The notes under the pieces: generated by a model
Database searches by the model: none
Seen by the model: the letters and a program-made list of their open reading frames with translations, nothing else
Told to the model about the DNA's origin: nothing
Translations under genes and position numbers: made by a program
NCBI RefSeq assembly: GCF_006345805.1
Contig: NC_042997.1
Location: 55,180,001-55,244,000, forward strand
Source: Octopus sinensis
Taxonomy: Eukaryota
Direction of reading: 5' to 3'
DNA length: 64,000 nucleotides
In this document: one piece after another, positions 1 through 64,000 of the stretch
Position numbering within the stretch: the first letter of the stretch is position 1
Layout: each line of letters starts with the position of its first letter

Positions 1-467
1 TCTGCGTAGGATGTGTGCAGTGCCTAGTAGTGCAATTTTCTGTATGTTATATGTGTTTGTAAGTCCTGGTGTTTTTGTTATGTATTTGTCTGAATATTTT
101 TTTATCATGCCTAATGCACCTACTATGATAGGAATTGTTTCTGTTTTCAGATTCCACATTCTAGTTACCTCTATTTCCAGGTCTTTGTATTTTGAAAGTT
201 TCTCCATTTCTTTTAGAGACACGTTGTCATCTGCCGGTACTGATACATCAATTAGAAAGCATTTTTTTTCTTCATGGTCTCTGACAACTATATCTGGTCT
301 GTTGGCCTTAATTTCTCTATCTGTGTGTATCGGCATATCCCAGACTATGGTTGCTTTCTCGTTTTCTGTGACCTTTTCTGGTGTGTGCCTATACCATCTT
401 TTTTCTGTTGTTATTCCATAATGTTGGCATAGCTTCCAATGTATGTAAGTTCCAACTCTGTCATGTC
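1..467 (-). mobile_element. R4/Dong-like non-LTR retrotransposon fragment (C-terminal restriction-like endonuclease region), runs off window
   Basis: Minus strand translates YGITTEKRWYRHTPEKVTENEKATIVWDMPIHTDREIKANRPDIVVRDHEEKKCFLIDVSVPADDNVSLKEMEKLSKYKDLEIEVTRMWNLKTETIPIIVGALG...QKIALLGTAHILRR: RPD..D..EK..KY RLE motif; its 5' end abuts an (AAT)n tract. ORF 11..421(+) is only the antisense. Confidence 0.9.
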
Positions 468-501
468 ATTATTATTATTATTATCATTATTATTATTATC
501 A

Positions 502-595
<94 letters not shown>

Positions 596-724
596 TTTAT
601 CATCATCCTTATCATCATCATCATGATCATCATTATTGCTGTTGTTGTTGTTGTTGTTATTATTGTTGTTGTTATTGTTGTTATTATCATTATTATTATT
701 AGTTTTATTATTATCATTGTTATT
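468..724. repeat. Compound (ATT)n/(ATC)n/(GTT)n microsatellite
   Basis: Direct inspection. Confidence 0.97.
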
Positions 725-1271
725 GAGTGAGAGAGCAATGCATGCTATCAAAGTGACGTTGGAGTAGAAATATACGGAGCCTAATATACCCATCATAACT
801 ACCCGTCTGATAAGAGTACACCAAACACATGCATCACAGCCACATGCGACTTGGTGATCTCATATCAATATAAAAGGCGCATGACTTTGCAGGTGAGGTT
901 CAGTTACAATTCTCTCCAGGTCGAGTAGCCCATCCCACCCAAAAGATCTCAGAATAAGGTTTGTTTTAGGATGATGAACGAAACACCGTGTTTCCATAGG
1001 TGAATTATTCAAACCCCACAAAATTCCTCTCAACACATGACTATGATGCTCCCCAACTACTCTTGCTCGTGATCAGAGATGCACATATCGTCAGTCAGCC
1101 AGCAAGCAACATGTTCAACTGGTTACGGTCAAACAACTGACAAGAAAATCTGTGTTGTTGAGCAGAATATTTGCTATAGCCCGTCTTTTATACCAAAACA
1201 AAACGTGTACATGATAACACCTCCAATAAGTTAAGATGAGAAGCGATGAGAGCCACTGGCTGGTACTGCAT
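725..1271 (-). mobile_element. ~550-bp TAA-associated non-coding retroelement, copy A (diverged)
   Basis: Reverse complement aligns along its length with 45181-45736 and 52363-52909; 3' end (...CTCTCTCACTC) runs into (AAT)n on its sense strand. Confidence 0.85.
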
Positions 1272-1299
1272 TATTATCTGTACTGGAAGGTTTTCTTTT

Positions 1300-13729: not shown

Positions 13730-13920
13730 CGGTGTGCTGGCTGAATCGTTAGCACACCTGGAAAATGCTTAGCCACATTTCGTCCGTCTTTACGTTCTGG
13801 GTTCAAATTCAAGCGAGGTCAATTTTGCCTTTCGAGGTCGATAAAATAAGTAATTGCTGGGAACTGTTAATCGAATTATCCCCCTCACACGAAATTTCTA
13901 CCCTTGTGCCAAAATTTTCA
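13730..13920 (+). mobile_element. tRNA-type SINE with Deu/Nin-like central motif
   Basis: TGGCTGAATCGTTAG head, GGGTTCAAATTC B box, GCCTTT..GAGGTCGATAAAATAAGTA motif; family also at 27555, 44345, 53950, 57255. The Deu/Nin label is from recall of the motif. Confidence 0.7.
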
Positions 13921-20871: not shown

Positions 20872-23568
20872 GATGTATATTGTTGCAGGCATCCTTTTTG
20901 TCTCGGGAGACAATGGAGTTGCGCATAAAATAATCTAGACCGGCTTTTACATTTCATGTCCTAATACATCTCCTGCTGTGGCTGTGTAGTCCTATCCTGG
21001 ACAAACACTCCCTCTAGCAGGTGCCGCAAATGTAGCGAAGACTTTGCCTGGCTGGTTGTAATGTCATACTTTCTTGTTGACGTCTTTTCTTGTCTTTCCA
21101 TTTCTCCTCTCTCTCTATGTCACTTCTTTGTGTTCCCCCTTTTACGGTACGTCGCCAAACTCCTCGGTTGCTGGCAACTACTTCCCAGTTGGTAATATTG
21201 ATGTTGCAGGCATTCATGTCCCTTTTGCAAACATCCTTGTAACGTAAGAATGGTCTTCCCACAGACCTAGTGCCCCTAGGAAGCTCTCCGTAGAGTATGT
21301 CCTTGGGGATTCTGCCATCTTCCATACGGCTAACATGTCCAAGCCATCTCATACGTCTTTGTGTGAGGAGTGCAACATGCTTGGTATTCCTGCTTGCTTG
21401 AGGACATCTTTGTTGCGGACATGATTCTGCCATTTGATGCGAAGGATTTCCCGGAGGCAGCGCAGGTGAAAGATATTTAGGCGACGCTCTTGGCGTGTGT
21501 ATGGCGTCCAAGTCTCACTTCCATACAGTAGAGTGCTAAGTACACATGCCTGGTAAATCTTAATTTTTGTGGTCTTGGTCAGCTTATTGTTGTCCCATGC
21601 CCGTTTGGATAGTTGGGCCATCACAGCAGCTGCCTTGCCAATGCGTATATTGAGCTCAGCATCAAGGGATATGTTGTAGGTGACGGTAGAGCTAAGATAG
21701 GTAAACTTCTCCACCTCTTGTAGTCTGTAGTCTCCAATATGTATGTTTGGAATGTCCGATGTATCCTGACCCATGATATTGGTCCTCTTGAGGCTGATAA
21801 CTAAGCCAAAGTCGCTACATGCTTACTCAAAACAGTTGATGAGCCTTTGTAGGGCTTTTTCTGTGCGTGATACCAGAGCGGCATCATTAGCAAATAGCAC
21901 CTCCTTGATCAGGACGCTTCTGATTTTGGTCTTGACACGCAGACACGAGAGATTGAACAGTTTCCTGTCACTTCTACTGTGCAGAAACACTCCATCATCT
22001 GATGTCTGAAAGGCATATGACAGCAGCAGCGAGAAGAAGATGCCAAATAATGTAGGGGCAACAGCACAACCTTGCTTTACCCCGTTTTTTATTTGGAAGG
22101 CCGTTGATGTTAAACCATTGTGCTGTATGGTGCCTTGCATATCATCATAGAAAGATTTGATGATCCTCAGCAGCTTTGGTGGACATCCGATTTTTTTGGA
22201 GCCGGATGAAGAGGCCTTTTCTACTTACCAAGTTAAAGGCCTTTGTCAGATCAATGAAGGCCATATATAATGGCATTTTTTGCTCTCTGAACTTCTCCTG
22301 AAGTTGGCGTATGGACAATATCATGTCAATAGTTGATCTGCTTCTTCTAAAGCCACACTGCGATTCTGGATAAATTCGAGAAGCAAGCAGTTGTAGCCTG
22401 GACAGGATAACGCGAGCAAAGGCCTTTCCAACAGTACTTAGAAGAGATATTCCACGGTAATTGTTACAATCACCACGTTCACCGTTGTTTTTGTAAAGCG
22501 CAATGATGTTAGCATCCCGCATATCCTGAGGGACTGTACCCTCTCCCCAGCACTGACACAGAAGCTCATGAATGTGCCGAAGCAGGATAGTGTTTTTGCC
22601 GGTTTTGATGATCTCTAAGGAGATGACGTCTTTTCCCGGAGCCTTGTTACTTGCTAGGGAGGCAATAGCTTTGATGAGCTCTGCTATAGATGGCAGACTG
22701 TCAAGTTCACACATGACTGGCAAGATCTTGACACCCTCGATTGCAGCCTCAGCTACCGTGGTCTCCTATGAGTAGAGATCCTGGTAGTACTTCACCCATC
22801 TATCCATTTGCTTGCTTTGGTCCTTGATGAGATCTCCAGTAGTTGATTTCAGAGGGGCTGACTTGGTTGCGGGTGGACCGAGGGCCTTCTTCAAACCGGC
22901 ACACATCTGTGACAGATTTCCTGCCAATACCTATTTGCACAGCATCTGGCAGTCAGTTGGGTTTTATTTCTTGCCTTTCTGAGTTCTTCGAGTGACTTTG
23001 TAGAAGAATCACTCTTGTATTGCATCAGAGCTGCACGCTTTGCTTCGATAACTGTTTCCAGTTCTGAGAGCCCAGCACTGAACCAATCTGGGTTTTGCCT
23101 TTCTCTCATGCCGAAAGTATCTATTGATGTGGTATACAAAGCTTCCCTGATATAATTCCACCTACTTTCAGCAGAGGAGGTTGGGCAGCTACTGAGGGCA
23201 ACCTTGATGGAAACAACAAAACATTTTCGCACTGTAGGGTCCGATGTTCTGGCAGTGTTAATGCGTAGTCGGCCCATTTTCTTGGAGTAATGGACTTTGT
23301 TAGGCAGAATCCTCACCCTGCTTCTTATTAGTGAATGATGTATGTCACAATCCGCACTGTGGTAACTACGGGTCAGTTGAACAGAAATCAGAAATGATAT
23401 TCGTGTAATGATGAGATCCAGCTGATGCCAGTGGTGAGATATTGGATGTCTCCAAGATGCCTTGTGGGATGTCTTGTTGGCAAAGAATGTGTTGGTGATG
23501 CACGGGTTATGGTATGTGCAAAATTCAAGTAGTCTCTGACCATTGTCATTCATGTTGCCAATACCAAA
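20872..23568 (-). mobile_element. 5'-truncated RTE-clade (BovB-like) LINE, frameshifted
   Basis: Collinear minus ORFs: APE C-terminus (FGIGNMNDNGQRLLEFC..HWHQLDLII), RT (YRGISLLSTVGK, PESQCGFR, AFIDLTKAF, GVKQG, LFANDA), RLNIFHLRCLREILRIKWQ, CGTC*RECLSRIGLHSHSRRC; short 3' UTR ending CCATTGTCTCCCGAGACAAAAAGGATGCC. Confidence 0.95.
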
Positions 23569-23633
23569 ACACATACACTTACATATATACATATATATAT
23601 ACGATTGATTTATTTCAGTTCCTGCCTACGAAA

Positions 23634-44344: not shown

Positions 44345-44566
44345 AATAATAATAATAATACTTTCTACTATAAGTACACGATCTGAAATTTTGGGGAGAG
44401 GTAAGTCGATTACACCGACCCCAATGCTTGATTGGCACTTATTTCATCGTCCCCCAGGGATGAAAGGTAAAGTCGACGTCGACAGAATTTGGACTGAAAA
44501 CGTAAAGACGGACAGAATACCGCTAAGCATTTCGCCCGGTTTGCTAACGATTCTGCCAGCTTGCCA
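44345..44566 (-). mobile_element. Deu/Nin-like SINE flanked by (TAA)n tracts
   Basis: Reverse complement GGCAAGCTGGCAGAATCGTTAGC head, GTCGACTTTACCTTTCATCCC core. Confidence 0.8.
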
Positions 44567-44665: not shown

Positions 44666-45120
44666 AAAATCCTGTGGGATGTAATGATCCAGTGCGATCG
44701 CCTGACCAGACATAGGAAACCGGACAGGGTTGTGGTGAATAAAAAAAGAAAGAACATGTATGATAATCGACATAGCATGCTCCGGTGACAACAGGGTCAA
44801 TGTGAAAATAGAAGAAAAAATAAACAACTATGACGATGTAAAGTGCGAAATACGAAGGTTGTGGTCAATGAAGAGAGTATACGTGATACCAATAGTAATT
44901 GGCGCACTTGGATGTATCAGAACTCAAATACCAACGTGGCTGAAAACGATCGGTGCAACTGTGAAGGTAGAACACCTACAAAAATCAGCATTGTATGGGA
45001 CTGCAAGAATTCTTCGCAGGGTTCTTGAAACATGACCAGTAAACAAGTGTCACCTTTTTCTGCTGGCTGTGAACAGCTGGCACTTCCCATCATACCCAGC
45101 AAAATAAGCCGTGAATTTTC

Positions 45121-45122
<2 letters not shown>
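44666..45122 (+). mobile_element. 5'-truncated R4/Dong-like LINE with an uninterrupted RLE reading frame and 3' UTR, flanked by (TAA)n
   Basis: 44666-45035 KILWDVMIQCDRLTRHRKPDRVVVNKKRRTCMIIDIAC...KINNYDDVK...IPIVIGALG...LQKSALYGTARILRRVLET*; (TAA)n on both sides. Confidence 0.92.
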
Positions 45123-45180
<58 letters not shown>

Positions 45181-45182
<2 letters not shown>

Positions 45183-45736
45183 GCCCTGATGCAGTACCAG
45201 GCAGTGGCTCTCATGGCTTCTGATCTTAACTGATTGGAAGTGTTATCATGTACATTGTTTTGTCTTGGTATAAAAGATAGGCTACAGCAAATATTCTGCT
45301 CAATACCACAGATTTGCTTGTCAGTTGTTTGACCTTAACCAGTTGAGCATGTCCCTTAGTGGCTGACGATATGTGCATCTCTGATCACGAGCAGACGTAG
45401 TGGGGAAGCATCATAGCCATGTGTTGAGAGGGATTCTTTGGGGTTTGAATAATTCACCTCTGGAAACATGGGTGGTTCTTTCAACATCCTTAAACAACCC
45501 TTATTCAGGGACCTTTTGAGCGGGATGGGCTACTCAACCTGAAGAAAATTCTAACTGGGCCCCACCTGCAAGGTCATGTGCTGTTTATCTTGATATGAGA
45601 TCACCATGTCGCGCACATATGGTTGTGATGCATGTGCCTGGTGTACCCTTATCAGACGGGTAGTCATGATGGGTATATTGGGCTTCGTATATTTTACCCC
45701 AGTGTCACTTTGATTGCATGCACTGCTCTCTCACTC
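45181..45736 (+). mobile_element. ~555-bp TAA-associated non-coding retroelement, copy B (longest)
   Basis: Flanked by (TAA)n both sides; very close to copy C. Confidence 0.9.
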
Positions 45737-45779
<43 letters not shown>

Positions 45780-46172
45780 GAGCATAACAAACCGGACCTA
45801 TAGGTGATCGACAAGATGCATCACATGTGCTATATAGTTGATGTTGCGTGTTCCTTTGACTCATGAATAGTCAAGAAGGAAGGCAAAAATATAAATACAA
45901 CCCTCTTAAGTACGAAATAGCCTGGTTATGTAAAATGAAGAAGGTGAAGGTAGTGCCAATTATTGTTTGGTTCTTGGGGACAGTATCAGAAGGCATCAAG
46001 AAGAATATAAAGGAAATTGGAATAGAGTGCCCAGTAGAACTGTTACAAAACATTTGCCTCCTTGGCGCAGCTAAAATAATCAAGAACGGACAGCATGGTA
46101 CTGTAGGCTGCAGGTAGCAAGCCCGCCACGAATGCAAGACTCCAGGAATTCCAACAAAATCTGTGCTAAAGT
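45780..46172 (+). mobile_element. 5'-truncated R4/Dong-like LINE fragment, degenerate
   Basis: EHNKPDL*VIDK..CYIVDVAC; KYNPLKYEIAWLCKMKKVKVVPIIVWFLGTVS...LQNICLLGAAKII; preceded by (TAA)n, short TAA/CAA tail. Confidence 0.85.
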
Positions 46173-46593
46173 AAATAAATAAATAATAATAACAACAACA
46201 ACTATGAAGTAAAAGAATAAGCAACAAAAGTTATGCAACAATTGAAATCCCAACTAAAACTGGAACAGCAACGGATCATGATAAAACGATGACAAGCAAA
46301 GCCCCTTCATGGCAAATATTGGGTTAAACTAAACGCAAAAGAAATAGACAGAGCAAAATCCCAACATTAAAAGTGTTGGACTATATCCGAGTAAATACAT
46401 ATTGGACTATATCCGATTAAGTACACATCACAAACACGTAAGTACGTAAACTAATTAACTACGTATACACCCCAGTTTTACATTAACACAATTTAATATT
46501 TCAAAATAACATTAAGTAATGTATAAACAGGATGCACACACATAAGCGAATCGAATAAAAACAAAAAGACAAATACTAGTCATTATTGATCAC

Positions 46594-47825
46594 GACAAAA
46601 TAATGGAGACACCTAGAATCATAGCATCATAATTTTGAAATATCCATAAAACCATCAAAAGCTTGTTTATTTTAATATTTTTGATTTATTATTAGTGTTG
46701 CTTAATATGTTTTCCTAAAATTGCAGTTTCTTTTCAGATATCATCAGAAAAAGGTAATTAAAATTCGTTAAACTGACAGATCTATCAGACTTTCAAAAAG
46801 GTCAAAATGTTGGCACTAGCGTATGGCAGGCACCAGCGTAACGAAAAAAGCTGAAATGTTTGGTGTATCAAGAAGTATTGTCTCGAAAGTAATGACAGCC
46901 TCGTCGAAACAAAACTTCGGAAGAAAACCAAAGACTTTCAAATAGGTACCGTCGGACTCTTACGCGATTTGTTACAAAGGATTACAAAAGTACAGCTCCC
47001 AAAATTACTGCAGTATTTAATGACCACCTCGAAAACCCAGTTTCCACAAAAAACTGTTCGCCGAGAGCTGCACAAAGCAGGATTTTACGGAAGGGCTGCA
47101 ATCAGAAAAGCACTACTTTCAAAGACAAATGTTGCAAAGTGTTTAGAGTGGAGTAAAAACCCACAGAATTGGTCCCTAGAGCAGTGAAAAAATGTTATTT
47201 TCTCAGACGAGTCATCCATTACCTTATTTCCGACCACCGGCCGAGTATACGTGTGGAGACAGCCAAAAGAAGCATTTGACCGAGACTGCCTTCTTCCAAC
47301 TGTTAAACATGGAGGAGGATCTGTGATGATCTAGGGGCGCTATATCTTGGAAATCTGCCAGCCCAATGGTTTCCCTTCATGGCAGAATTAATAATAAAGA
47401 CTATTTAAGCATTTTATCTGATCAAATTCATTCTACGGCTGTGGAACTGTTTCCGCAGTGAAACGCAATCTTTCAGGATGATAATGCACCAATTCGCACA
47501 GCTAAAGTTATTACTGAATGGCACGCGGAACATTCTAGTGAAGTTGACATCTTATCTGGCCGCCACAGTCTCCAGATCTCTATATTATTGAACATTTATG
47601 GTGCATTTTAGAAAAAAAAAAAAAACAGGTAAGGAGTCGATATCTTCCACCACCATTACTACAAGAACTGGAGACTGTTTTAGCTGAAGAATGGACAAAA
47701 ATTCCTTTGGAAGCAATTAAAACTTTGCACAAGTCCATACCTCGTAGAATTCAAGCTGTAATTACTACCCCATATTAAAATAAATTTGTTTGAAATTTTA
47801 AGGTGTTTCTATTATTTTGTCCAAC

Positions 47826-47999: not shown

Positions 48000-50900
48000 G
48001 ACCCGGAGCCTAGTACTCACATGCAAATGTTAATGACAATTAGCCAAAACTTATGTTGGATCAGAGGAAATATTAACAATGAAAAATAGTAAAACATGAA
48101 AATAATAATATCAGTGATGATAATAGTAATAAAGGAAGTAAGTGGTCGGAATTTCCCTATGTTCTGATCGAAGATACATTTAGTGATGGTGTCACAATAA
48201 AAACACTGGTAACTGCGCAACCTGATAATCGCTACCTCATATGGGTGACAGTGAAAAAACAAAATATTGGGAATAACAGTGGGAATGAAACTGAAACCTT
48301 TGATGGTGACAGTATTGCACTCGGCAGGCTCAGAGATACTGGTCCGGCTCCAGCCTGTCGTTATCCAGCAACCCAGCAATGGATTAGTATACATGACGTT
48401 GATAGAACAAACAAGTCAATGCTGTGGTCATGGAGTGTTACTATCTGAGAAGTCCTGTAGACGAAAATGGTGCTCATATTGGAGGATACTGACAACGTAG
48501 GTATGATCAGTGGAGAGAAAGAAGATTGTTTCAACACACGGAAAAGAGATTATGCGCTCAAACTAGAGCAATAAGAAACTTGGAGCTATCATTGAAGAAA
48601 TCAGCAGCAGAGGAAACGATGAAAATACAGTTCTTACTGATAAATGTAATCTCATAGCAGAAAATAGAGGTGAGATAAACCACAAGAAAGGAACAGTGAT
48701 AGCTTGCTCAATGAGAGACATATAGATGGTCTGGCAGAAGACAATAAAACTAATGGTGACATGACAGACGAGTAAAAGGCAATCTACGACAGAATAAAAG
48801 CAAGGGTACAGGAGAACGACAGCGACATTATTTGCAAACTTAAATAGGTTGATCGGTGGAAATCGAACCAAGAAACGAAAAATGTGATTGAAATTCTGAA
48901 ATACATCAGAACAAAAAAACAACAACAAAAAAACATCACAAACAAAAAATTTGATCAAGGCAGCAAGTATTGTTGAAGCAGAAAATGTGGGTGTTGAAAT
49001 ATAATGGGAGTGCCAAAAGAAAAGGTCCATGGTGGAAAAGAAGAATACAGCCAAGGTTAGATATGCGCTGTGTTGGACCGAAAAGAGAAGGGGGAGCTTA
49101 AAAACGAAGTAAAATACAGGGAATATAATATTGAAAGAAAGGGACTGAAAGTGGTAATGGATGAACTGAAACAGCGCCTCGTTGCAAATAAAGCAAAGAT
49201 GGTAAGATACGACCAAAGAATGAAGGGATGCCAGCAGAATAGGAATTTCAGAGTAGAATACCAGATAACATTGAAAGTAAAAGGTTTTGGAGTGACATCT
49301 GAAGCATAGACAAGGAGCACAAGAAGGATGCTCAATGGTTGCAAGAACTGAAACAAACAATAGTTTGTCCACAACAGGCAGAGCTAGTCATTTTAGTTAG
49401 GGAAGTGAAGGAAATCAGCAAAAAAGTGGGCAGCTGAAAGGCCCCGAGACCAGATGAAGTTCAAGGCTACTAGATCAAAAGATATGGTGAATGTCATGCA
49501 CGAAGAGCTGCACAACTCATCACCTTGTTAAATGCCGACCAAGTAACACCAGAGGGGTTGACAATAGGTAGGACAGTGTTGTGCCTGAAAAACTTCGAAA
49601 AAGGCAATACGGTAGACAACTATAAACCGATGTCCGGCTTGCTACTTATGTGGAAATTATTGACTGGAATAGTCACAGAGTCAATGTACGAACATCTGGA
49701 AAAATGGAGTCCTGTTACATGAGCAGAAGGGATGCAAGTGTAAGTGCAGAGGTACCAAGGATCAACTCCTGGTAGACAAAACTGTACTTAGAGATTGCAA
49801 GAGGAGTAAAACTAACTTAGCCATGTCATGGATTGATTATCGTAGGGCATACGATATGATCCCACATTCTTAGATTGTGGAATGTATGAACCTATTTCGT
49901 ATTGCATCGAATGTTGAGCGATTGCTTGGAAAAGTATGGCGAAGTGGAGGACGGAACTGACAACATATAGAAGAATTTTATGGACAATAGAAATCAGGAG
50001 AGGTATTCTTCCAAGGGGACTGCCTGTCTCCCCTGATCTTTGTACTGTGCATAATATCACTAACACTGATTCTGAGGAAAGCAAAGGTTGGGTATGTAAT
50101 CAAGAGCCGCAAACAAAATGTCAACCACTTGTTATTCATAGATGACTTCAAATTTTATGGTGAAGATGAATCCCAAGTCAGTTCACTCGTTGATACAGTG
50201 TATACTTTCAGTGCTGATATCAGCATGGAGTTCGGACTTAAGAAGTGTGATCTGTTAGTCTTGATAAGAAGCAAAATCAAATGTATGAACGGGCTAGTGA
50301 TACTGTTAGGGGAGGATATAAAGCGAATAGAAAAGACGAGCTATATGTACTTTGGGATATTGGAAATGGATAAATTGATGGAGAAAGAAATGACAGAAAA
50401 ATCTAAGGTGGAGTACTTGCGAGGACTGAGACAGATGCTTAAGTCGAAATTAAACGGACGGAATAAGATTGAAGCTATCAACATCTGGTCGGTTTCACTA
50501 CTTAGATATGGAGCAGGAGTAATCGCATGGACAGTAGACGAACTAAACAGCTTAGAGAGAAAGACAAGGAAGTTGCCGATTAGATATGGGATACTCCACC
50601 CAAAAAGTGATACTGATAGACTGTATGTATCAAGAAAAAGGGGGAAGAGGATTGATTGGATGCGAACACAGCATTAGTGCTGAAGAAAACAATATAGCAT
50701 GGTATGTAAAAAATTCTACAGAACCGCTATTATTAGCAGTAAGAAGTTTCAGGCTTGTGTAGGATGGAAGATTGCAAAGATAAAGCACGGTACAAGCACT
50801 TGAGAATGAAGGAAACTGAAAATAGGTGGATGAAGAAAAGAATGCATGGACAATTTCGTAGAGATGTTGAGGATAGGCCATAGAAAATAGATTGCTATGG

Positions 50901-51421
50901 ATGACTAAAAGTGATTTAAAACCGGAAACGGAGGCTCTAATCTGTGCTGCCCAAGAGCAAGCGTTAAGAGTCAATTACATCAAATACAGAATAGGCAACA
51001 CATCAGAAAGTGATAAGTGCAGAATTTTTGGACAAAATAGTTAAACCATATGGCGTATTGGACAAAATGATGAAACCGTACGGCATACGCCACTAGCTCA
51101 GAAAGAATATAAGAGGCGCCATCGTAATATAGCGAGGGCTGTCCATTGGACACTTTGCAACAAGTATGGACTTGACAGAGCAAATGATTCAGTGCGACCA
51201 TGAGATAGAGAATAGGAAACCAGACATAGTGTTAATTGAGAAAGAAAGCAAACGATGCTGGATCATAGATATAGCATGCCCAGCTAACAACAAGGTATGC
51301 GACAAGGAAGAAAGAAAAGTCGATAGATATGACAGGTTAGCTTGGGAGGTTAAGAAGGTGAAAAAGGTGGTTGTAGTAGTAATAGTAGTAGTGGTAATAG
51401 TAGTAGTAGTATTATTATTAT

Positions 51422-51456
<35 letters not shown>

Positions 51457-51682
51457 CCAATAATTGTCGGAGCCCTGGAAACAGAGAGTAAAAATCTTGA
51501 GAAGTACACGAAACAAATAAGGGCTGTAATAAGGCTGGAACACTTGCAGAAAACAGCAGTGCTTGGAACCGCTTGAATACTCTGGATGGTGCTCGAAAAA
51601 ATAAAGGGGTGTAACCTTAGTTCATTGGTAGTGAACGGCTGACACCGTAGTACATCTCCAGCGTTAGAAGCTGTGGAAAGAC
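48000..51682 (+). mobile_element. Near full-length degenerate R4/Dong-like non-LTR retrotransposon
   Basis: Collinear motifs: VMECYYL..EKRLCAQTRAI; ELKQRLVANKAKMVRYDQR; RT ([50 protein letters not shown]); MHGQF; ETEALICAAQEQAL; knuckle remnant; RLE (RKPDIV..IIDIACP..ERKVDRY..LAWEV, PIIVGAL, LQKTAVLGTA); 3' UTR then (TAA)n. 5' boundary uncertain. Confidence 0.92.
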
Positions 51683-51687
51683 AATAA

Positions 51688-51823
<136 letters not shown>

Positions 51824-51845: not shown

Positions 51846-52255
51846 GAGCAGATACCAGAAGGGGTATAAGAGAATGATAAATTTAAGCCAAATTATCGAT
51901 ACCTCCACCCAAGAGATATTAGAGTGAAAAATAAAGTGCATGAAACGATGAAGTATGAGCCACTGAAGGAGAAGATTGGAAAAATGTAAGGTATGAAGAA
52001 GGTCTTAGTGAGTCCAGTGGTAGTGGGAACATTGGGATGCATATCAGACAGATTCAAGGCCAGTAAATAAAATCGGAGTCGATGTAATGTTAAAGGTTAT
52101 GCATTAGACAACATTTCTTGGTGTAGCGAGTGTTTTAAGAAAGGCACAAAAAATTAAGCAGTAAGGGACCTTTGTCAACTTGTTGTTCATTGCCCTCTCA
52201 CTGAAATGTGCGTACCGTTTAACATCCAAGTGTCTGAGATTTACAAAAATGAAAC
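51846..52255 (+). mobile_element. 5'-truncated, internally deleted R4/Dong-like fragment between (TAA)n tracts
   Basis: QIPEGV*ENDKFK; KYEPLKEKIGKM*GMKKVLVSPVVVGTLGCIS. Confidence 0.8.
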
Positions 52256-52345
<90 letters not shown>

Positions 52346-52362
52346 TGATGATAATAATAATA

Positions 52363-52909
52363 GATGCAGTACCAGGCAGTGGCTCTCATGGCTTCTGATC
52401 TTAACTGATTGGAAGTATTATCATGTACATTGTTTTGTCTTGGTATAAAAGATGGGCTACAGCAATATTCTGCTCAATACCACAGATTGCTTGTCAGTTG
52501 TTTGACCATAACCAGTTGAGCATGTCCCTTAGTGGCTGACGATATGTGCATCTCTGATCACGAGCAGAAGTAGTGGGGGAGCATCATAGCCATGTGTTGA
52601 GAGGGATTCTTTGGGGTTTGAATAATTCACCTCTGGAAACATGGGTGGTTCTTTCAACATCCTTAAACAACCCTTATTCAGGGACCTTTTGAGCGGGATG
52701 GGCTACTCAACCTGAAGAAAATTCTAACTGGGCCCCACCTGCAAGGTCATGTGCTGTTTATCTTGATATGAGATCACCATGTCGCGCACATATGGTTGTG
52801 ATGCATGTGCCTGGTGTACCTTTATCAGACGGGTAGTCATGAAGGGTATATTGGGCTTCGTATATTTTACCCCAGTGTCACTTTGATTGCATGCACTGCT
52901 CTCTCACTC
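52363..52909 (+). mobile_element. TAA-associated non-coding retroelement, copy C
   Basis: Near-identical to copy B, ~6 nt shorter at the 5' end, (TAA)n both sides. Confidence 0.9.
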
Positions 52910-52933
52910 AATAATAATAATAATAATAATATA

Positions 52934-52988
<55 letters not shown>

Positions 52989-52990
<2 letters not shown>

Positions 52991-53360
52991 AATCATAGAT
53001 AAGGAAAACTGAAGTTGCTTACTTATCGGTCCACTTGCCCGTTTGATTCCAGGATCGTAAAGAAAGCGGAAGATAAACAAAGAAAATAAAATTTGAAATT
53101 TTGGAGCGTGTGAACCGTAAAGGTTGTGCCTATAATGATTGATGCGTTGGGAACAGTAAGCCAAGATATAGACAAATGGTCGAAGAAGAATGAAACAGAA
53201 TGCCCGATAGAGCACCCACAGAAAGTGTGCCTTTTAGAGAGAGGAAATATTATCAGGAGGGTTCTAAGTACTTGAAAGACTGCCGAAAACACGTGGTTAC
53301 TTTAGGTTACAGGTAGTAACCCGCTACCCACGCTAATCATACCAGGAATAAGACCAAACC
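52989..53360 (+). mobile_element. 5'-truncated R4/Dong-like fragment, degenerate
   Basis: VKVVPIMIDALGTVSQDIDKW...ECPIEHPQKVCLL...IIRRVLST*; preceded by (TAA)n. Confidence 0.8.
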
Positions 53361-53746
53361 TGTGCATCTCTGATCAGGAGCATGATTAGTTGGGGAGCAC
53401 CATAGCCATGTGTTAAGAGGGATTTGGGTGGGGGTTGAATGATTCATACCTTGAAAGAGGAGTGTTTCTTTCATCGTCTTTAAACAACCCTTATACAGAG
53501 ATCTTTTGAGTTGGGTAGGCTACTCGACCTGAATAAAATTCTAACTGGGCCCCACCTGCAAGGTCATACCCTGTTTATCTTGATATGACGTCACCAATTC
53601 GCGCACATACTGTTATATGCGTGACTTGGTTATGCTGCTTGTGCCTGCCTGGTGTACCCTTATGAGACCTCTAGTTATGATTGGTGTATTGGGCCTCATA
53701 TTTGCTCCCCAGTGTCACTTTGGTGGCGTATGCTACCTTTTCATTC
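53361..53746 (+). mobile_element. TAA-associated non-coding retroelement, copy D (5'-truncated, diverged)
   Basis: Aligns to the 3' two-thirds of copy B; followed by (TAA)n then (GAA)n. Confidence 0.85.
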
Positions 53747-53833
<87 letters not shown>

Positions 53834-57254: not shown

Positions 57255-57470
57255 ATTGATTTAAAATTTTGGCACAAGGCCAGCAATTTCGGGGGAGAGG
57301 ATCAGTTAATTACATCGAACCTAGTGTTCAACTGATACTTATTTTATCGACTCTGAAAGGATGAAAGGCAAAGTCGACCTCGACGGAATTTGAACTCAGA
57401 ACATGAAAACGGGCGGAATGCCGCGAAGCATTTTGTTTGGTGGGCTAACGATACTGTCAGTTCACCGTGT
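57255..57470 (-). mobile_element. Deu/Nin-like SINE; shorter relic at ~53950-54060
   Basis: GATGAAAGGCAAAGTCGACCTCGACGGAATTTGAACTCAG matches the family at 44345. Confidence 0.8.
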
Positions 57471-63420: not shown

Positions 63421-63759
63421 GCACGTACTTGTGGGTATATTTTGGTGTGTATGTGCGTGTGTGTGTATGTTTACAAATGTACGTGCATACACATACATGT
63501 ATATGTACGTATCACTTGATATACGTTGATTTGCATACAAATTTGTGTACACACACACATACACATAAATATATACATATATATATATATTCATTAATGT
63601 CATTAATGCTTGAATATGAAAATATGTTTAGATTAGTTTATATATATTTAAGAATGTATATATATAACGTATGTATATAGCAAGTTAGTAAGATAGATAT
63701 TAGTTTACATATATACATACACACACACACATATACATATATATATATATATATGTATA

Positions 63760-64000
63760 CGTGGTCTGATCAATAAGTATTCGGACTGTTGCCATAGTAA
63801 CGAGGTTAAAGCATGTAGAGTAAAGCCGTCTGGTGCAGATTGATCTTGAACTCTGCTGTGTATGCGCAGTAAGTTTTAACGTTCTAGCTTACTTCCCCTG
63901 TTTACAGCAGTGCTTGGAAGGAAAGTGTGTAGCATGTGAACTTCGCATTGAATCTGCATCAAATTTTGCCAAAATCTTGGCGGTTCCTGCTCAGAGGCCT
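63760..64000 (+). mobile_element. 5' end of a mariner-like transposon, runs off window
   Basis: TA|CGTGGTCTGATCAATAAGTATTCGGACTG terminus; last bases translate ICIKFCQNLGGSCSEA (mariner QR.CIKFC..LG.S.SE. start). Confidence 0.8.

What the first reader, a model, noticed from the sequence alone, without database searches (positions are those of the whole stretch)
45181..45736. A ~555-bp non-coding element that looks like a SINE-like partner of TAA-targeting R4/Dong LINEs
Seen: four copies (725-1271 minus, 45181-45736, 52363-52909, 53361-53746). All end at ...CTCTCA(C/T)TC directly into (AAT)n, and all have the same polarity relative to the TAA strand as the neighbouring RLE LINEs. Three start within ~8 nt of each other; one is deeply 5'-truncated. 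There is no long ORF and no convincing tRNA A/B box pair, unlike the other SINEs here. Established: Dong (R4 clade) inserts into (TAA)n by target-primed reverse transcription, and SINEs borrow LINE machinery via shared 3' ends. Inference: a non-autonomous element with a defined 5' end and a non-tRNA head, mobilised by an RLE-type LINE. I do not recognise it; RLE-partnered SINEs are rare to my knowledge.
Basis: partly seen in the sequence, partly recalled or inferred. Interest (0 to 1): 0.82.

Follow-up and report, generated by a model that had tools for sequence, protein, structure and literature searches.

The report
Octopus TAA-repeat-targeting non-coding retroposon
A ~550-bp non-coding mobile element in an octopus genome lands only in (TAA)n microsatellites beside R2/Dong-like LINE fragments, so it most likely borrows their machinery, but it lacks every feature that defines a classical SINE.

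Summary
There are four copies at exactly the stated coordinates. Three are full-length and start within 8 nt of each other. One begins at element position ~190. All run into (AAT)n, and none has a conserved ORF, a tRNA match or an Rfam match.

The window is Octopus DNA. The neighbouring LINE fragments are R2-superfamily elements with a restriction-like endonuclease, and they also end in (TAA)n. TAA arrays cover 1.2% of the window, yet 8 of 9 scorable 5' junctions of TAA-tailed elements abut one. This shows TAA targeting in a fixed orientation.

- It is a non-autonomous retroposon, most likely moved by Dong-like LINEs.
- It is not a classical SINE: it has no A/B boxes, and three T4 runs lie on the sense strand.
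- It shares no detectable 3' end with any of the five LINE 3' ends visible here.
- The HDV-like 5' ribozyme that Bombyx Dong uses was not found.
- The "truncated" copy D is fused, with no TAA unit between, to the complete 3' UTR of a LINE fragment. This may be a template-jump chimera or a chance nested insertion.

No further octopus DNA carrying the element could be reached. Copy number, the origin of the head and the partner LINE remain untested. I judge it a new variant of a known kind, of moderate interest.

The parts
45181..45736 (+). Copy B, full length. The conserved core starts at 45188 (GATGCAG). 45181-45187 are extra bases at the 5' junction.
52363..52909 (+). Copy C, full length, 98.4% identical to B. 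It starts exactly at GATGCAG after (ATA)n.
725..1271 (-). Copy A, full length, 86% identical to B, an older source lineage. It starts at ATGCAG after ATAATAAT.
53361..53746 (+). Copy D, 78% identical to B positions 192-556, with a 21-nt insertion. It is joined with no TAA unit to the LINE 3' UTR upstream.
52990..53360 (+). LD: a degraded C-terminal RLE-LINE fragment. The ORF remnant is at 53033-53272 and is followed by an 85-nt stretch after the stop that matches the canonical short 3' UTR of this LINE group. It lies directly upstream of D.
   Evidence: nhmmer E=0.017
45188..45370 (+). Head of the element (~183 nt in copy B), origin unknown. It matches neither the LINE fragments nor anything else in the window. 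It has no A/B boxes and no HDV-like fold. A TATAAAAG at 45269-45276 is conserved in A, B and C.
45371..45736 (+). Tail module (~365 nt), shared by all four copies. The predicted fold includes a 20-bp hairpin at 45636-45683 that is kept mostly through G-U changes.
45123..45180 (+). (ATA)n target array upstream of B
45737..45779 (+). (AAT)n array downstream of B
52256..52362 (+). (ATA)n array upstream of C
52910..52989 (+). (AAT)n array downstream of C and upstream of LD
53747..53830 (+). (AAT)28 array downstream of D
468..724 (-). Impure (AAT)n array downstream of A (written as ATT on the + strand)
1..465 (-). 5'-truncated RLE-LINE fragment inserted in the array downstream of A. It runs off the window.
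44672..45122 (+). L44: a 5'-truncated RLE-LINE fragment with an 87-nt canonical 3' UTR, lying between two TAA arrays upstream of B
45780..46185 (+). L45: a 5'-truncated RLE-LINE fragment downstream of B's array
48936..51682 (+). L51a: a long, frameshifted RLE LINE (RT, CCHC, PD..D..K) that ends in (AAT)n at 51683
51846..52255 (+). L51b: a 5'-truncated RLE-LINE fragment between two TAA arrays upstream of C

Best explanation
The element is a non-coding, non-autonomous retroposon of about 550 bp from an Octopus genome. Its RNA is copied into (TAA)n microsatellites by target-primed reverse transcription, using the protein of TAA-specific, restriction-like-endonuclease LINEs of the Dong/R4 type.

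Shown:
- It is a family with a fixed 5' end, a fixed 3' end and no coding capacity.
- It inserts inside TAA arrays in one orientation.
- It shares those arrays with RLE-LINE fragments in the same orientation.
- Its 5' junctions vary in the way R2-type insertions do.
- It has evolved through successive source lineages, in the order D-like, A-like, then B/C.

Inferred:
- The LINE endonuclease nicks the TTA strand, and the freed 3' end pairs with a (UAA)n run at the 3' end of the element's transcript.
- That repeat tail, rather than a copied LINE 3' UTR, is what the two share. This would be a relaxed, Alu/L1-like relationship.
- The 190-nt head supplies a defined RNA start, probably an internal pol II-type promoter, because neither pol III signals nor the Dong-type 5' ribozyme are present.
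- Copy D is most simply a product of the same machinery: reverse transcription of a broken element RNA followed by a jump onto the 3' end of a LINE RNA.
For: - Four copies with matching ends. B and C have unrelated outer flanks.
- TAA arrays make up 1.2% of the window, yet 8 of 9 scorable 5' junctions of TAA-tailed elements abut TAA. All ten elements have the same polarity relative to the repeat.
- The LINEs are RLE type. An RT profile hits R2 proteins at E=2.6e-24 against L1 ORF2p at 3e-9. The C-terminal domain's best PDB match is R2 residues 996-1081, aligning on RKPD. A Pfam RVT_1 domain is present.
- A related LINE in another species also ends in (TAA)n.
- The window is Octopus: its RTE LINE is 90.6% identical to O. 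bimaculoides CM046602.1.
- The literature reports that Dong targets (TAA)n, including in a snail (PMC3812793), and that Dong-R4 families are recently active in O. vulgaris (PMC13282606).
- B carries 6-7 extra bases at its 5' junction. This kind of variation is described for R2 and its SIDEs (PMC3414825).
- There are no ORFs, tRNA matches or Rfam matches. There are no A/B boxes, and three T4 runs lie on the sense strand.
- A and D share 16 states against B/C, where about 5 are expected by chance. Head and tail are equally diverged between A and B.
- R2 reverse transcriptase is known to template-jump in vivo (PMC3414825).
Against: - Only four copies in one 64-kb window were seen. No other octopus DNA carrying the element could be reached, so copy number, the distribution of 5' ends and flank statistics genome-wide are unknown.
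- No LINE 3' end in the window shares sequence with the tail. R2 and R1 are 'stringent' elements that need their own 3' UTR (PMC3414825), so a relaxed mode is an assumption.
- The partner could be a LINE family that is absent from the window and carries this tail.
- No promoter was demonstrated. The conserved TATAAAAG lies at position ~82 and would not start RNA at position 1.
- The D/LD junction can also be explained by an ordinary nested insertion that left no TAA unit.
- Structure conservation in the tail is weak, with four sequences and 3 double changes.
Confidence: 0.62

Rival explanations
1. It is a short internally deleted element (SIDE, or bipartite non-autonomous LINE). The head would be the 5' end and the tail the long 3' UTR of a Dong-type LINE family that does not occur full-length in this window. 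Recognition would then be stringent, through the parent's own 3' UTR.
For: R2 SIDEs and other bipartite non-autonomous LINEs have exactly this layout (PMC3414825; PMC5786205). Copy D sits downstream of a LINE ORF remnant with no TAA between, as expected if some LINE lineage carries this tail. D-like states are ancestral to B/C. Head and tail have diverged together.
Against: Bombyx Dong and R4 define their 5' end with an HDV-like ribozyme (PMC3774820). No such fold exists at the 5' end of A, B or C: the descriptor gave 0 candidates against a mean of 5.7-9.1 in shuffles, and Rfam found nothing at E<=10. The 85 nt that LD carries after its stop already look like a complete canonical short UTR (E=0.017), so D looks appended rather than part of that UTR. 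The head has no similarity to any LINE sequence available.
Confidence: 0.22
2. It is not a separate element. It is simply the long 3' UTR of a LINE, and A, B and C are ordinary 5'-truncated LINE copies.
For: D continues upstream into a LINE ORF fragment. RLE LINEs in this window are nearly all 5'-truncated.
Against: Three independent copies start within 8 nt of each other and are preceded by TAA repeats, not by LINE sequence. For random truncation of a LINE of more than 4 kb this is roughly a 1-in-10^5 coincidence. The head (positions 1-190) does not align with LD's ORF or UTR: score 20 against 21±3 for shuffles. No LINE peptide matches inside the copies.
Confidence: 0.06
3. The TAA runs are tails carried by the element rather than targets. 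The partner would be an AP-endonuclease LINE, for example the abundant octopus RTE, and the clustering with RLE LINEs would be a coincidence of a repeat-rich region.
For: Many LINE/SINE pairs end in simple repeats (PMC5786205). An RTE LINE lies in the window.
Against: B and C have long TAA arrays on both sides. Chains of four or five same-orientation elements are separated only by TAA arrays. The RTE copy here has no TAA tail. Every coding fragment inside the arrays is RLE type.
Confidence: 0.05
4. The copies arose by segmental or tandem duplication of a local sequence, not by transposition.
For: B, C and D lie within 9 kb of each other.
Against: The outer flanks of B and C are different LINE fragments. 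A is 44 kb away on the other strand. Divergence ranges from 1.6% to 22%, with shared derived states. The copy ends are exact.
Confidence: 0.02

Closest known systems
R2 SIDEs (short internally deleted elements) of Drosophila (Eickbush & Eickbush 2012, PMC3414825)
   Same: Both are non-coding, non-autonomous partners of a site-specific RLE LINE. Both are inserted at the LINE's own target by TPRT, have variable 5' junctions and are a few hundred bp long.
   Different: SIDEs carry the parent's 5' HDV-like ribozyme and its 3' UTR. Here no ribozyme fold was found and no LINE 3' UTR in reach matches the tail. The target is a microsatellite rather than rDNA.
Dong (R4 clade) LINEs: Bombyx Dong, DongAg, snail DongBg
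   Same: Both target (TAA)n in a fixed polarity relative to the repeat (PMC3812793). Dong-R4 families are recently active in Octopus (PMC13282606).
   Different: [quoted passage not shown] This element has no ORF and no such ribozyme.
Bipartite non-autonomous LINEs (RIME/ingi, NARTc/L1Tc, RTESINE, WALLSI3, Vingi derivatives; PMC5786205) and the CR1-derived SIDE Persaeus (PMC6740152)
   Same: All are LINE-dependent retroposons without a small-RNA head and with a defined 5' end.
   Different: Those derive demonstrably from both ends of an AP-endonuclease LINE. Derivation of this element's head and tail is unproven, and its presumed partner is an RLE LINE.
Relaxed LINE parasites (Alu and SVA with L1)
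   Same: The only feature shared with the partner appears to be a simple-repeat 3' tail that can pair with the nicked target. SVA likewise lacks a pol III head.
   Different: L1 uses an AP endonuclease and poly(A). Here the tail would be (UAA)n and the enzyme a site-specific RLE protein. This analogy is inference only.
Classical tRNA-derived SINEs, including the octopus SINE copies in this window
   Same: Both are short, non-coding, repeated and LINE-dependent.
   Different: This element has no A/B boxes, no tRNA or other small-RNA similarity, and T4 runs inside it. The octopus SINE copies here do not end in TAA.

Membership tests
Classical SINE | Head derived from tRNA, 7SL, 5S or snRNA with an internal pol III promoter | tested here: not met
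   ARAGORN found none. Rfam found nothing relevant at E<=10. No B box within 2 mismatches, and only poor A-box matches.
Classical SINE | Transcribable by pol III without internal terminators | tested here: not met
   T4 runs on the sense strand at positions 78, 334 and 512 of copy B.
Classical SINE | [quoted passage not shown] | tested here: inconclusive
   No similarity to the five LINE 3' ends in the window. Copy D is fused to a LINE 3' UTR, but that UTR already looks complete. The partner family may lie outside the window.
Classical SINE | Short, non-coding, multicopy, with defined ends | tested here: met
   547-556 bp. ORFs are 50 aa or less and not conserved. Four copies with matching ends.
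SIDE / bipartite non-autonomous derivative of an R2/R4-type LINE | 5' end is the parent's 5' end, including its HDV-like self-cleaving ribozyme | tested here: not met
   A generic double-pseudoknot descriptor gave 0 candidates at the 5' ends of A, B and C, against a mean of 5.7-9.1 in shuffles. No Rfam ribozyme family matched. No full-length octopus Dong was available, so homology to a parental 5' end is untested.
SIDE / bipartite non-autonomous derivative of an R2/R4-type LINE | 3' end is the parent's 3' UTR | tested here: inconclusive
   No match except the ambiguous LD-D fusion.
SIDE / bipartite non-autonomous derivative of an R2/R4-type LINE | Inserted at the parent's target, with 5' junction variation typical of TPRT | tested here: met
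   The copies sit in TAA arrays, and B has 6-7 extra bases at its junction.
Dong/R4-clade LINE (for the neighbouring coding fragments) | Single-ORF architecture: RT, then a CCHC motif, then a C-terminal PD..D..K restriction-like endonuclease, with no AP endonuclease | tested here: met
   RVT_1 domain. RT profile best hits R2 proteins. C-terminal domain aligns to the R2 RLE region. KPD...IID...EK motifs can be read. No Exo_endo_phos hit.
Dong/R4-clade LINE (for the neighbouring coding fragments) | Insertion into (TAA)n | tested here: met
Dong/R4-clade LINE (for the neighbouring coding fragments) | Phylogenetic placement inside the R4 clade rather than R2, NeSL, Hero or CRE | not tested
   No reference Dong or R4 protein could be obtained. 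The assignment rests on target, architecture and the published Dong-R4 annotation of octopus genomes (PMC13282606, PMC8967140).
Non-autonomous partner of the TAA-specific LINEs (the claim made here) | Mobilised in trans by the LINE protein | not testable with these tools
   This needs a retrotransposition assay, or population or empty-site data.

The most novel reading that the evidence does not exclude
The element may be a 'relaxed' parasite of a site-specific RLE LINE. On this reading the Dong-type protein would accept any RNA that ends in (UAA)n, because the repeat pairs with the nicked TTA strand. The element would succeed by supplying only its own promoter-bearing head and a stable RNA body, with no ribozyme and no copied LINE 3' UTR. 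That would make TAA microsatellites in octopus genomes general landing pads for trans-mobilised RNAs, including chimeras such as LD-D. It would also contrast with the stringent 3' UTR recognition established for R2 and R1.
Probability: 0.3. Interest if true: 0.62.

Novelty: new variant of a known kind. Interest (0 to 1): 0.45.

Why it matters
Non-autonomous partners of RLE LINEs are rarely described. The papers found here describe R2 SIDEs, and one calls SIDEs of non-LTR elements rare. Those partners keep the parent's ribozyme and 3' UTR. A young family that uses the TAA target of Dong-type LINEs without either feature would ask how these enzymes choose their RNA template: by a strict 3' UTR, or merely by a repeat tail. 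B and C differ by 1.6%.

It also bears on octopus genomics. Dong-R4 LINEs are among the most recently active elements there, and hundreds of 'unclassified SINE' families are reported. TAA microsatellites used as markers would be embedded in repeated flanks. The practical gain is modest: a better repeat library and a testable system for template choice by an R2-like reverse transcriptase.

Tried and rejected
1. More copies from the source genome were sought and none were found.
- Exact-protein look-ups of short ORFs in the element and of LINE and RTE ORFs in the window returned nothing.
- A protein search with the degraded LINE peptide next to D found no candidates.
- Two exact-pattern scans of the metagenome collection returned nothing.

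2. Seven outside loci were fetched through LINE/RTE protein hits. Only L002 is octopus (O. bimaculoides chromosome CM046602.1, RTE 90.6% identical), and it holds no copy. L001 and L003-L007 are other organisms.

3. Small-RNA head or ribozyme. The Rfam gathering search, the Rfam search at E<=10, ARAGORN, the A/B-box scan and a structural descriptor for HDV-like ribozymes were all negative. Only the generic fold topology was used. No viral sequence was used.

4. Tail shared with LINEs. A blastn with word size 7 gave only chance-level hits. A profile of three canonical LINE 3' UTRs does not hit the element. It does hit the 85 nt between the LINE stop codon and D. I had suspected by eye that element positions 130-215 resemble the canonical UTR. 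No search supported this, and I dropped the idea.

5. The head as LINE coding or UTR sequence was rejected.

6. Structure conservation in the tail. RNAalifold and pair counting show a plausible fold, but four sequences are too few to prove it.

7. Literature searches for a described Dong-dependent SINE, or for an 'R4-derived' retroposon class, found none in the library. My memory of such a RepeatMasker class remains unverified.

Full report
**Observation**

- B: 45181-45736 (+).
- C: 52363-52909 (+), 98.4% identical to B.
- A: 725-1271 (-), 86% identical to B.
- D: 53361-53746 (+), 78% identical to B positions 192-556, with a 21-nt insertion.

A, B and C end in CTCTCTCACTC and D ends in TTTTCATTC. 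In every case (AAT)n follows directly.

The three long copies begin at GATGCAG (C), at ATGCAG (A), and at GATGCAG preceded by 6-7 extra bases (B). A profile built from the four copies finds nothing else in the window.

B and C are independent insertions. Beyond their TAA arrays they are flanked by different LINE fragments.

The longest ORFs are 50 aa or less, and B and C share none. ARAGORN finds no tRNA. Rfam finds nothing at gathering score in the window, and nothing relevant at E<=10 in the element.

**Source and setting**

The window is AT-rich and full of microsatellites. An RTE-type LINE at 20954-23569 is 90.6% identical over 2.66 kb to a locus on Octopus bimaculoides chromosome CM046602.1. 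Its best named protein matches are O. bimaculoides proteins. The window therefore comes from that species or a close Octopus relative.

**The neighbouring LINEs**

tblastn with the C-terminal ORFs finds six fragments of one LINE group:
- 465-1 (-)
- 44672-45122
- 45780-46185
- about 48936-51682, long and frameshifted
- 51846-52255
- 52990-53360

They carry an RVT_1 domain. A profile of their reverse transcriptase hits R2 proteins in the PDB at E=2.6e-24 to 1e-14, against about 3e-9 for L1 ORF2p. The C-terminal domain of a better-preserved relative (locus L001) has R2 residues 996-1081 as its best PDB match, aligning on the RKPD motif. The KPD...IID...EK pattern can be read directly.

Each fragment ends in (TAA)n, and so does the related LINE in L001, which comes from another organism. 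Published work reports that Dong elements of the R4 clade target (TAA)n in silkworm, mosquito and a snail (PMC3812793). It also reports that Dong-R4 LINEs are abundant and recently active in Octopus (PMC13282606; PMC8967140; PMC9115989). I did not place these fragments in a phylogeny, so 'Dong-like' rests on target, architecture and published annotation.

**Targeting**

TAA arrays occupy 1.2% of the window. Of the nine TAA-tailed elements whose 5' junction can be scored, eight abut TAA repeats. All ten elements have the same polarity relative to the repeat.

They form three nests:
- A - array - LINE.
- array - L44 - array - B - array - L45.
- L51a - array - L51b - array - C - array - LD - D - array.

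Tails carried in by randomly inserting elements cannot explain this. It requires insertion into pre-existing TAA arrays in a fixed orientation. The RTE LINE in the window has no TAA tail, and the tRNA-like octopus SINE copies do not end in TAA.

**What the element is not**

*Not a classical SINE.* It has no B box within two mismatches and only poor A-box matches. Three T4 runs on the sense strand would stop pol III.

*Not simply a LINE 3' UTR.* The three 5' ends coincide. The first ~190 nt have no similarity to the LINE sequence upstream of D: local score 20, against 21±3 for shuffles. No LINE peptide matches inside the copies.

*Not shown to share its 3' end with a LINE.* blastn at word size 7 against all five visible LINE 3' regions gave only chance-level hits. 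A profile of three canonical ~85-nt LINE 3' UTRs does not hit the element.

**Copy D**

That same UTR profile does hit the 85 nt between the LINE stop codon and D (53296-53352, E=0.017). By alignment this stretch runs almost to the end of the canonical UTR. Compare ...ATCATACCAGGAATAAGACCAAAC with L44's ...ATCATACCCAGCAAAATAAGCCGTG....

D therefore begins where the LINE's TAA tail should be, with no TAA unit between. Every other junction in the window has 43-257 nt of array. Three readings remain open:
- The reverse transcriptase jumped from a broken element RNA onto the 3' end of a LINE RNA. R2 reverse transcriptase does this in vivo (PMC3414825).
- A LINE lineage acquired this sequence as a 3' extension.
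- An ordinary nested insertion happened to leave no repeat unit.

The first two tie the element to the LINE machinery. The third is neutral. I cannot separate them with one example.

**The ribozyme test**

Bombyx Dong, R4 and R2 define their RNA 5' end with an HDV-like self-cleaving ribozyme. For Dong, cleavage occurs exactly at the junction with the upstream TAA repeats (PMC3774820). R2 SIDEs keep that ribozyme. A Dong-derived SIDE should therefore start with such a fold.

I wrote a generic descriptor with these parts:
- P1 of 6-7 bp starting within 12 nt of the junction.
- A 3-bp G+C-rich P3 with a 5-9-nt loop directly before the P1 return strand.
- P2 of 5-7 bp closing after a C-containing joiner.

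It gave no candidate in A, B or C. Shuffled sequences gave a mean of 5.7 candidates, or 9.1 when one mismatch was allowed. No Rfam ribozyme family matched. The head therefore does not look like a Dong or R2 5' end. A very aberrant ribozyme, or a 5' UTR of a family without one, is not excluded.

**Family history and RNA structure**

A and D share 16 character states against B/C, where about 5 would be expected from independent decay. Head and tail are equally diverged between A and B, at 88.7% and 87.2% identity. The unit has therefore evolved as a whole through successive source copies, with B/C the youngest.

The full-length RNA folds somewhat better than shuffles (z = -2.8). A consensus fold of the tail includes a 20-bp hairpin (45636-45683 in B) that is kept mainly through G-U changes. 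With four sequences the covariation signal is weak: 3 pairs with double changes and 95.2% of cells paired, against 93.7% in shuffles.

**Mechanism proposed**

The element is a non-autonomous retroposon. Its RNA, which ends in (UAA)n because every copy sits in a TAA array, is used by the protein of a TAA-specific RLE LINE. The TTA strand is nicked, the repeat tail pairs with the primer, and reverse transcription runs to a defined RNA 5' end. That explains the common start and the junction extras.

Targeting, orientation, the defined ends and co-residence with RLE LINEs are shown. The partner's identity, recognition through the tail only, and a promoter in the head are inferred.

The main rival is a SIDE-like origin from a Dong family not represented in the window. 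It predicts a LINE with this head and tail elsewhere in the genome.

**Limits**

All conclusions rest on four copies in 64 kb. No further octopus DNA with the element could be reached. Only one 20-kb O. bimaculoides locus was reached and it has no copy. The other fetched loci belong to other organisms. Exact-protein look-ups and metagenome scans were empty. Dfam and Repbase could not be queried, so the family may already sit in a repeat library under an 'unknown' or 'unclassified SINE' label.

**Verdict**

It overreaches in calling the element a SINE that shares its 3' end with its partner.

Relative to known systems it is a new variant of the non-autonomous LINE-parasite theme. It is closest to R2 SIDEs but lacks their two defining modules. 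Interest is moderate.

Noticed in passing
window 53360/53361 (LD 52990-53360 joined to D 53361-53746): A LINE fragment with an apparently complete canonical 3' UTR is fused directly to internal position ~190 of the element with no TAA unit between. Every other junction in the nests has 43-257 nt of array. This may be an in vivo template-jump chimera.
   Followed up: partly
window 20954-23569 (-): An RTE-type AP-endonuclease LINE with several long ORF pieces, 90.6% identical over 2.66 kb to O. bimaculoides chromosome CM046602.1 (L002). It identifies the window as Octopus. It has no TAA tail.
   Followed up: partly
window 49257-51713 versus L001 9162-11608 (ENA ERZ25066843 contig): The long RLE LINE is 72% identical in DNA (82% across the RLE region) to a LINE in another organism that shares no other repeat with the window. 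That LINE also ends in (TAA)n and sits among many TAA arrays. This points to either deep conservation or horizontal spread of the LINE lineage. The closest named proteins are from the octocoral Paramuricea clavata (54-56% identity).
   Followed up: partly
window 51373-51456: A (GTA)n microsatellite has expanded inside the LINE's endonuclease ORF. It reads as a run of valines between VKK and PIIVGAL.
   Followed up: no
window 45038-45123, 51604-51686, 53296-53352; L001 11487-11590: The short (~85-nt) 3' UTRs of several of these LINEs share a conserved layout, GTNAC...GTNAAC hairpin-like motif followed by CATCTCCAGC / CATACCCAGC. It is conserved across species and is a candidate protein-binding 3' element. 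The element lacks it.
   Followed up: partly
window 44385-44565, 57261-57467, 13730-13917, 63710-63951: Copies of a ~190-bp octopus SINE, about 80% identical to copies in L002. Read on the opposite strand, it has tRNA-like box motifs. Its ends are not TAA, so it uses a different partner.
   Followed up: partly
window 46969-47775 (+): Remnants of a Tc1/mariner transposase (HTH and DDE-region peptides) between the B nest and the long LINE.
   Followed up: no
window 45269-45276 (and the same position in A and C): A TATAAAAG motif is conserved at about position 82 of the element's head. It is too far inside to explain the 5' end, and its role is unknown.
   Followed up: no
window 1272-1290 (-): Upstream of copy A the flank reads CCAGTACAG-ATAATAAT-GCAGTACCAG. 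The flank thus repeats the element's first bases, which may be microhomology used at the 5' junction or may be chance.
   Followed up: no
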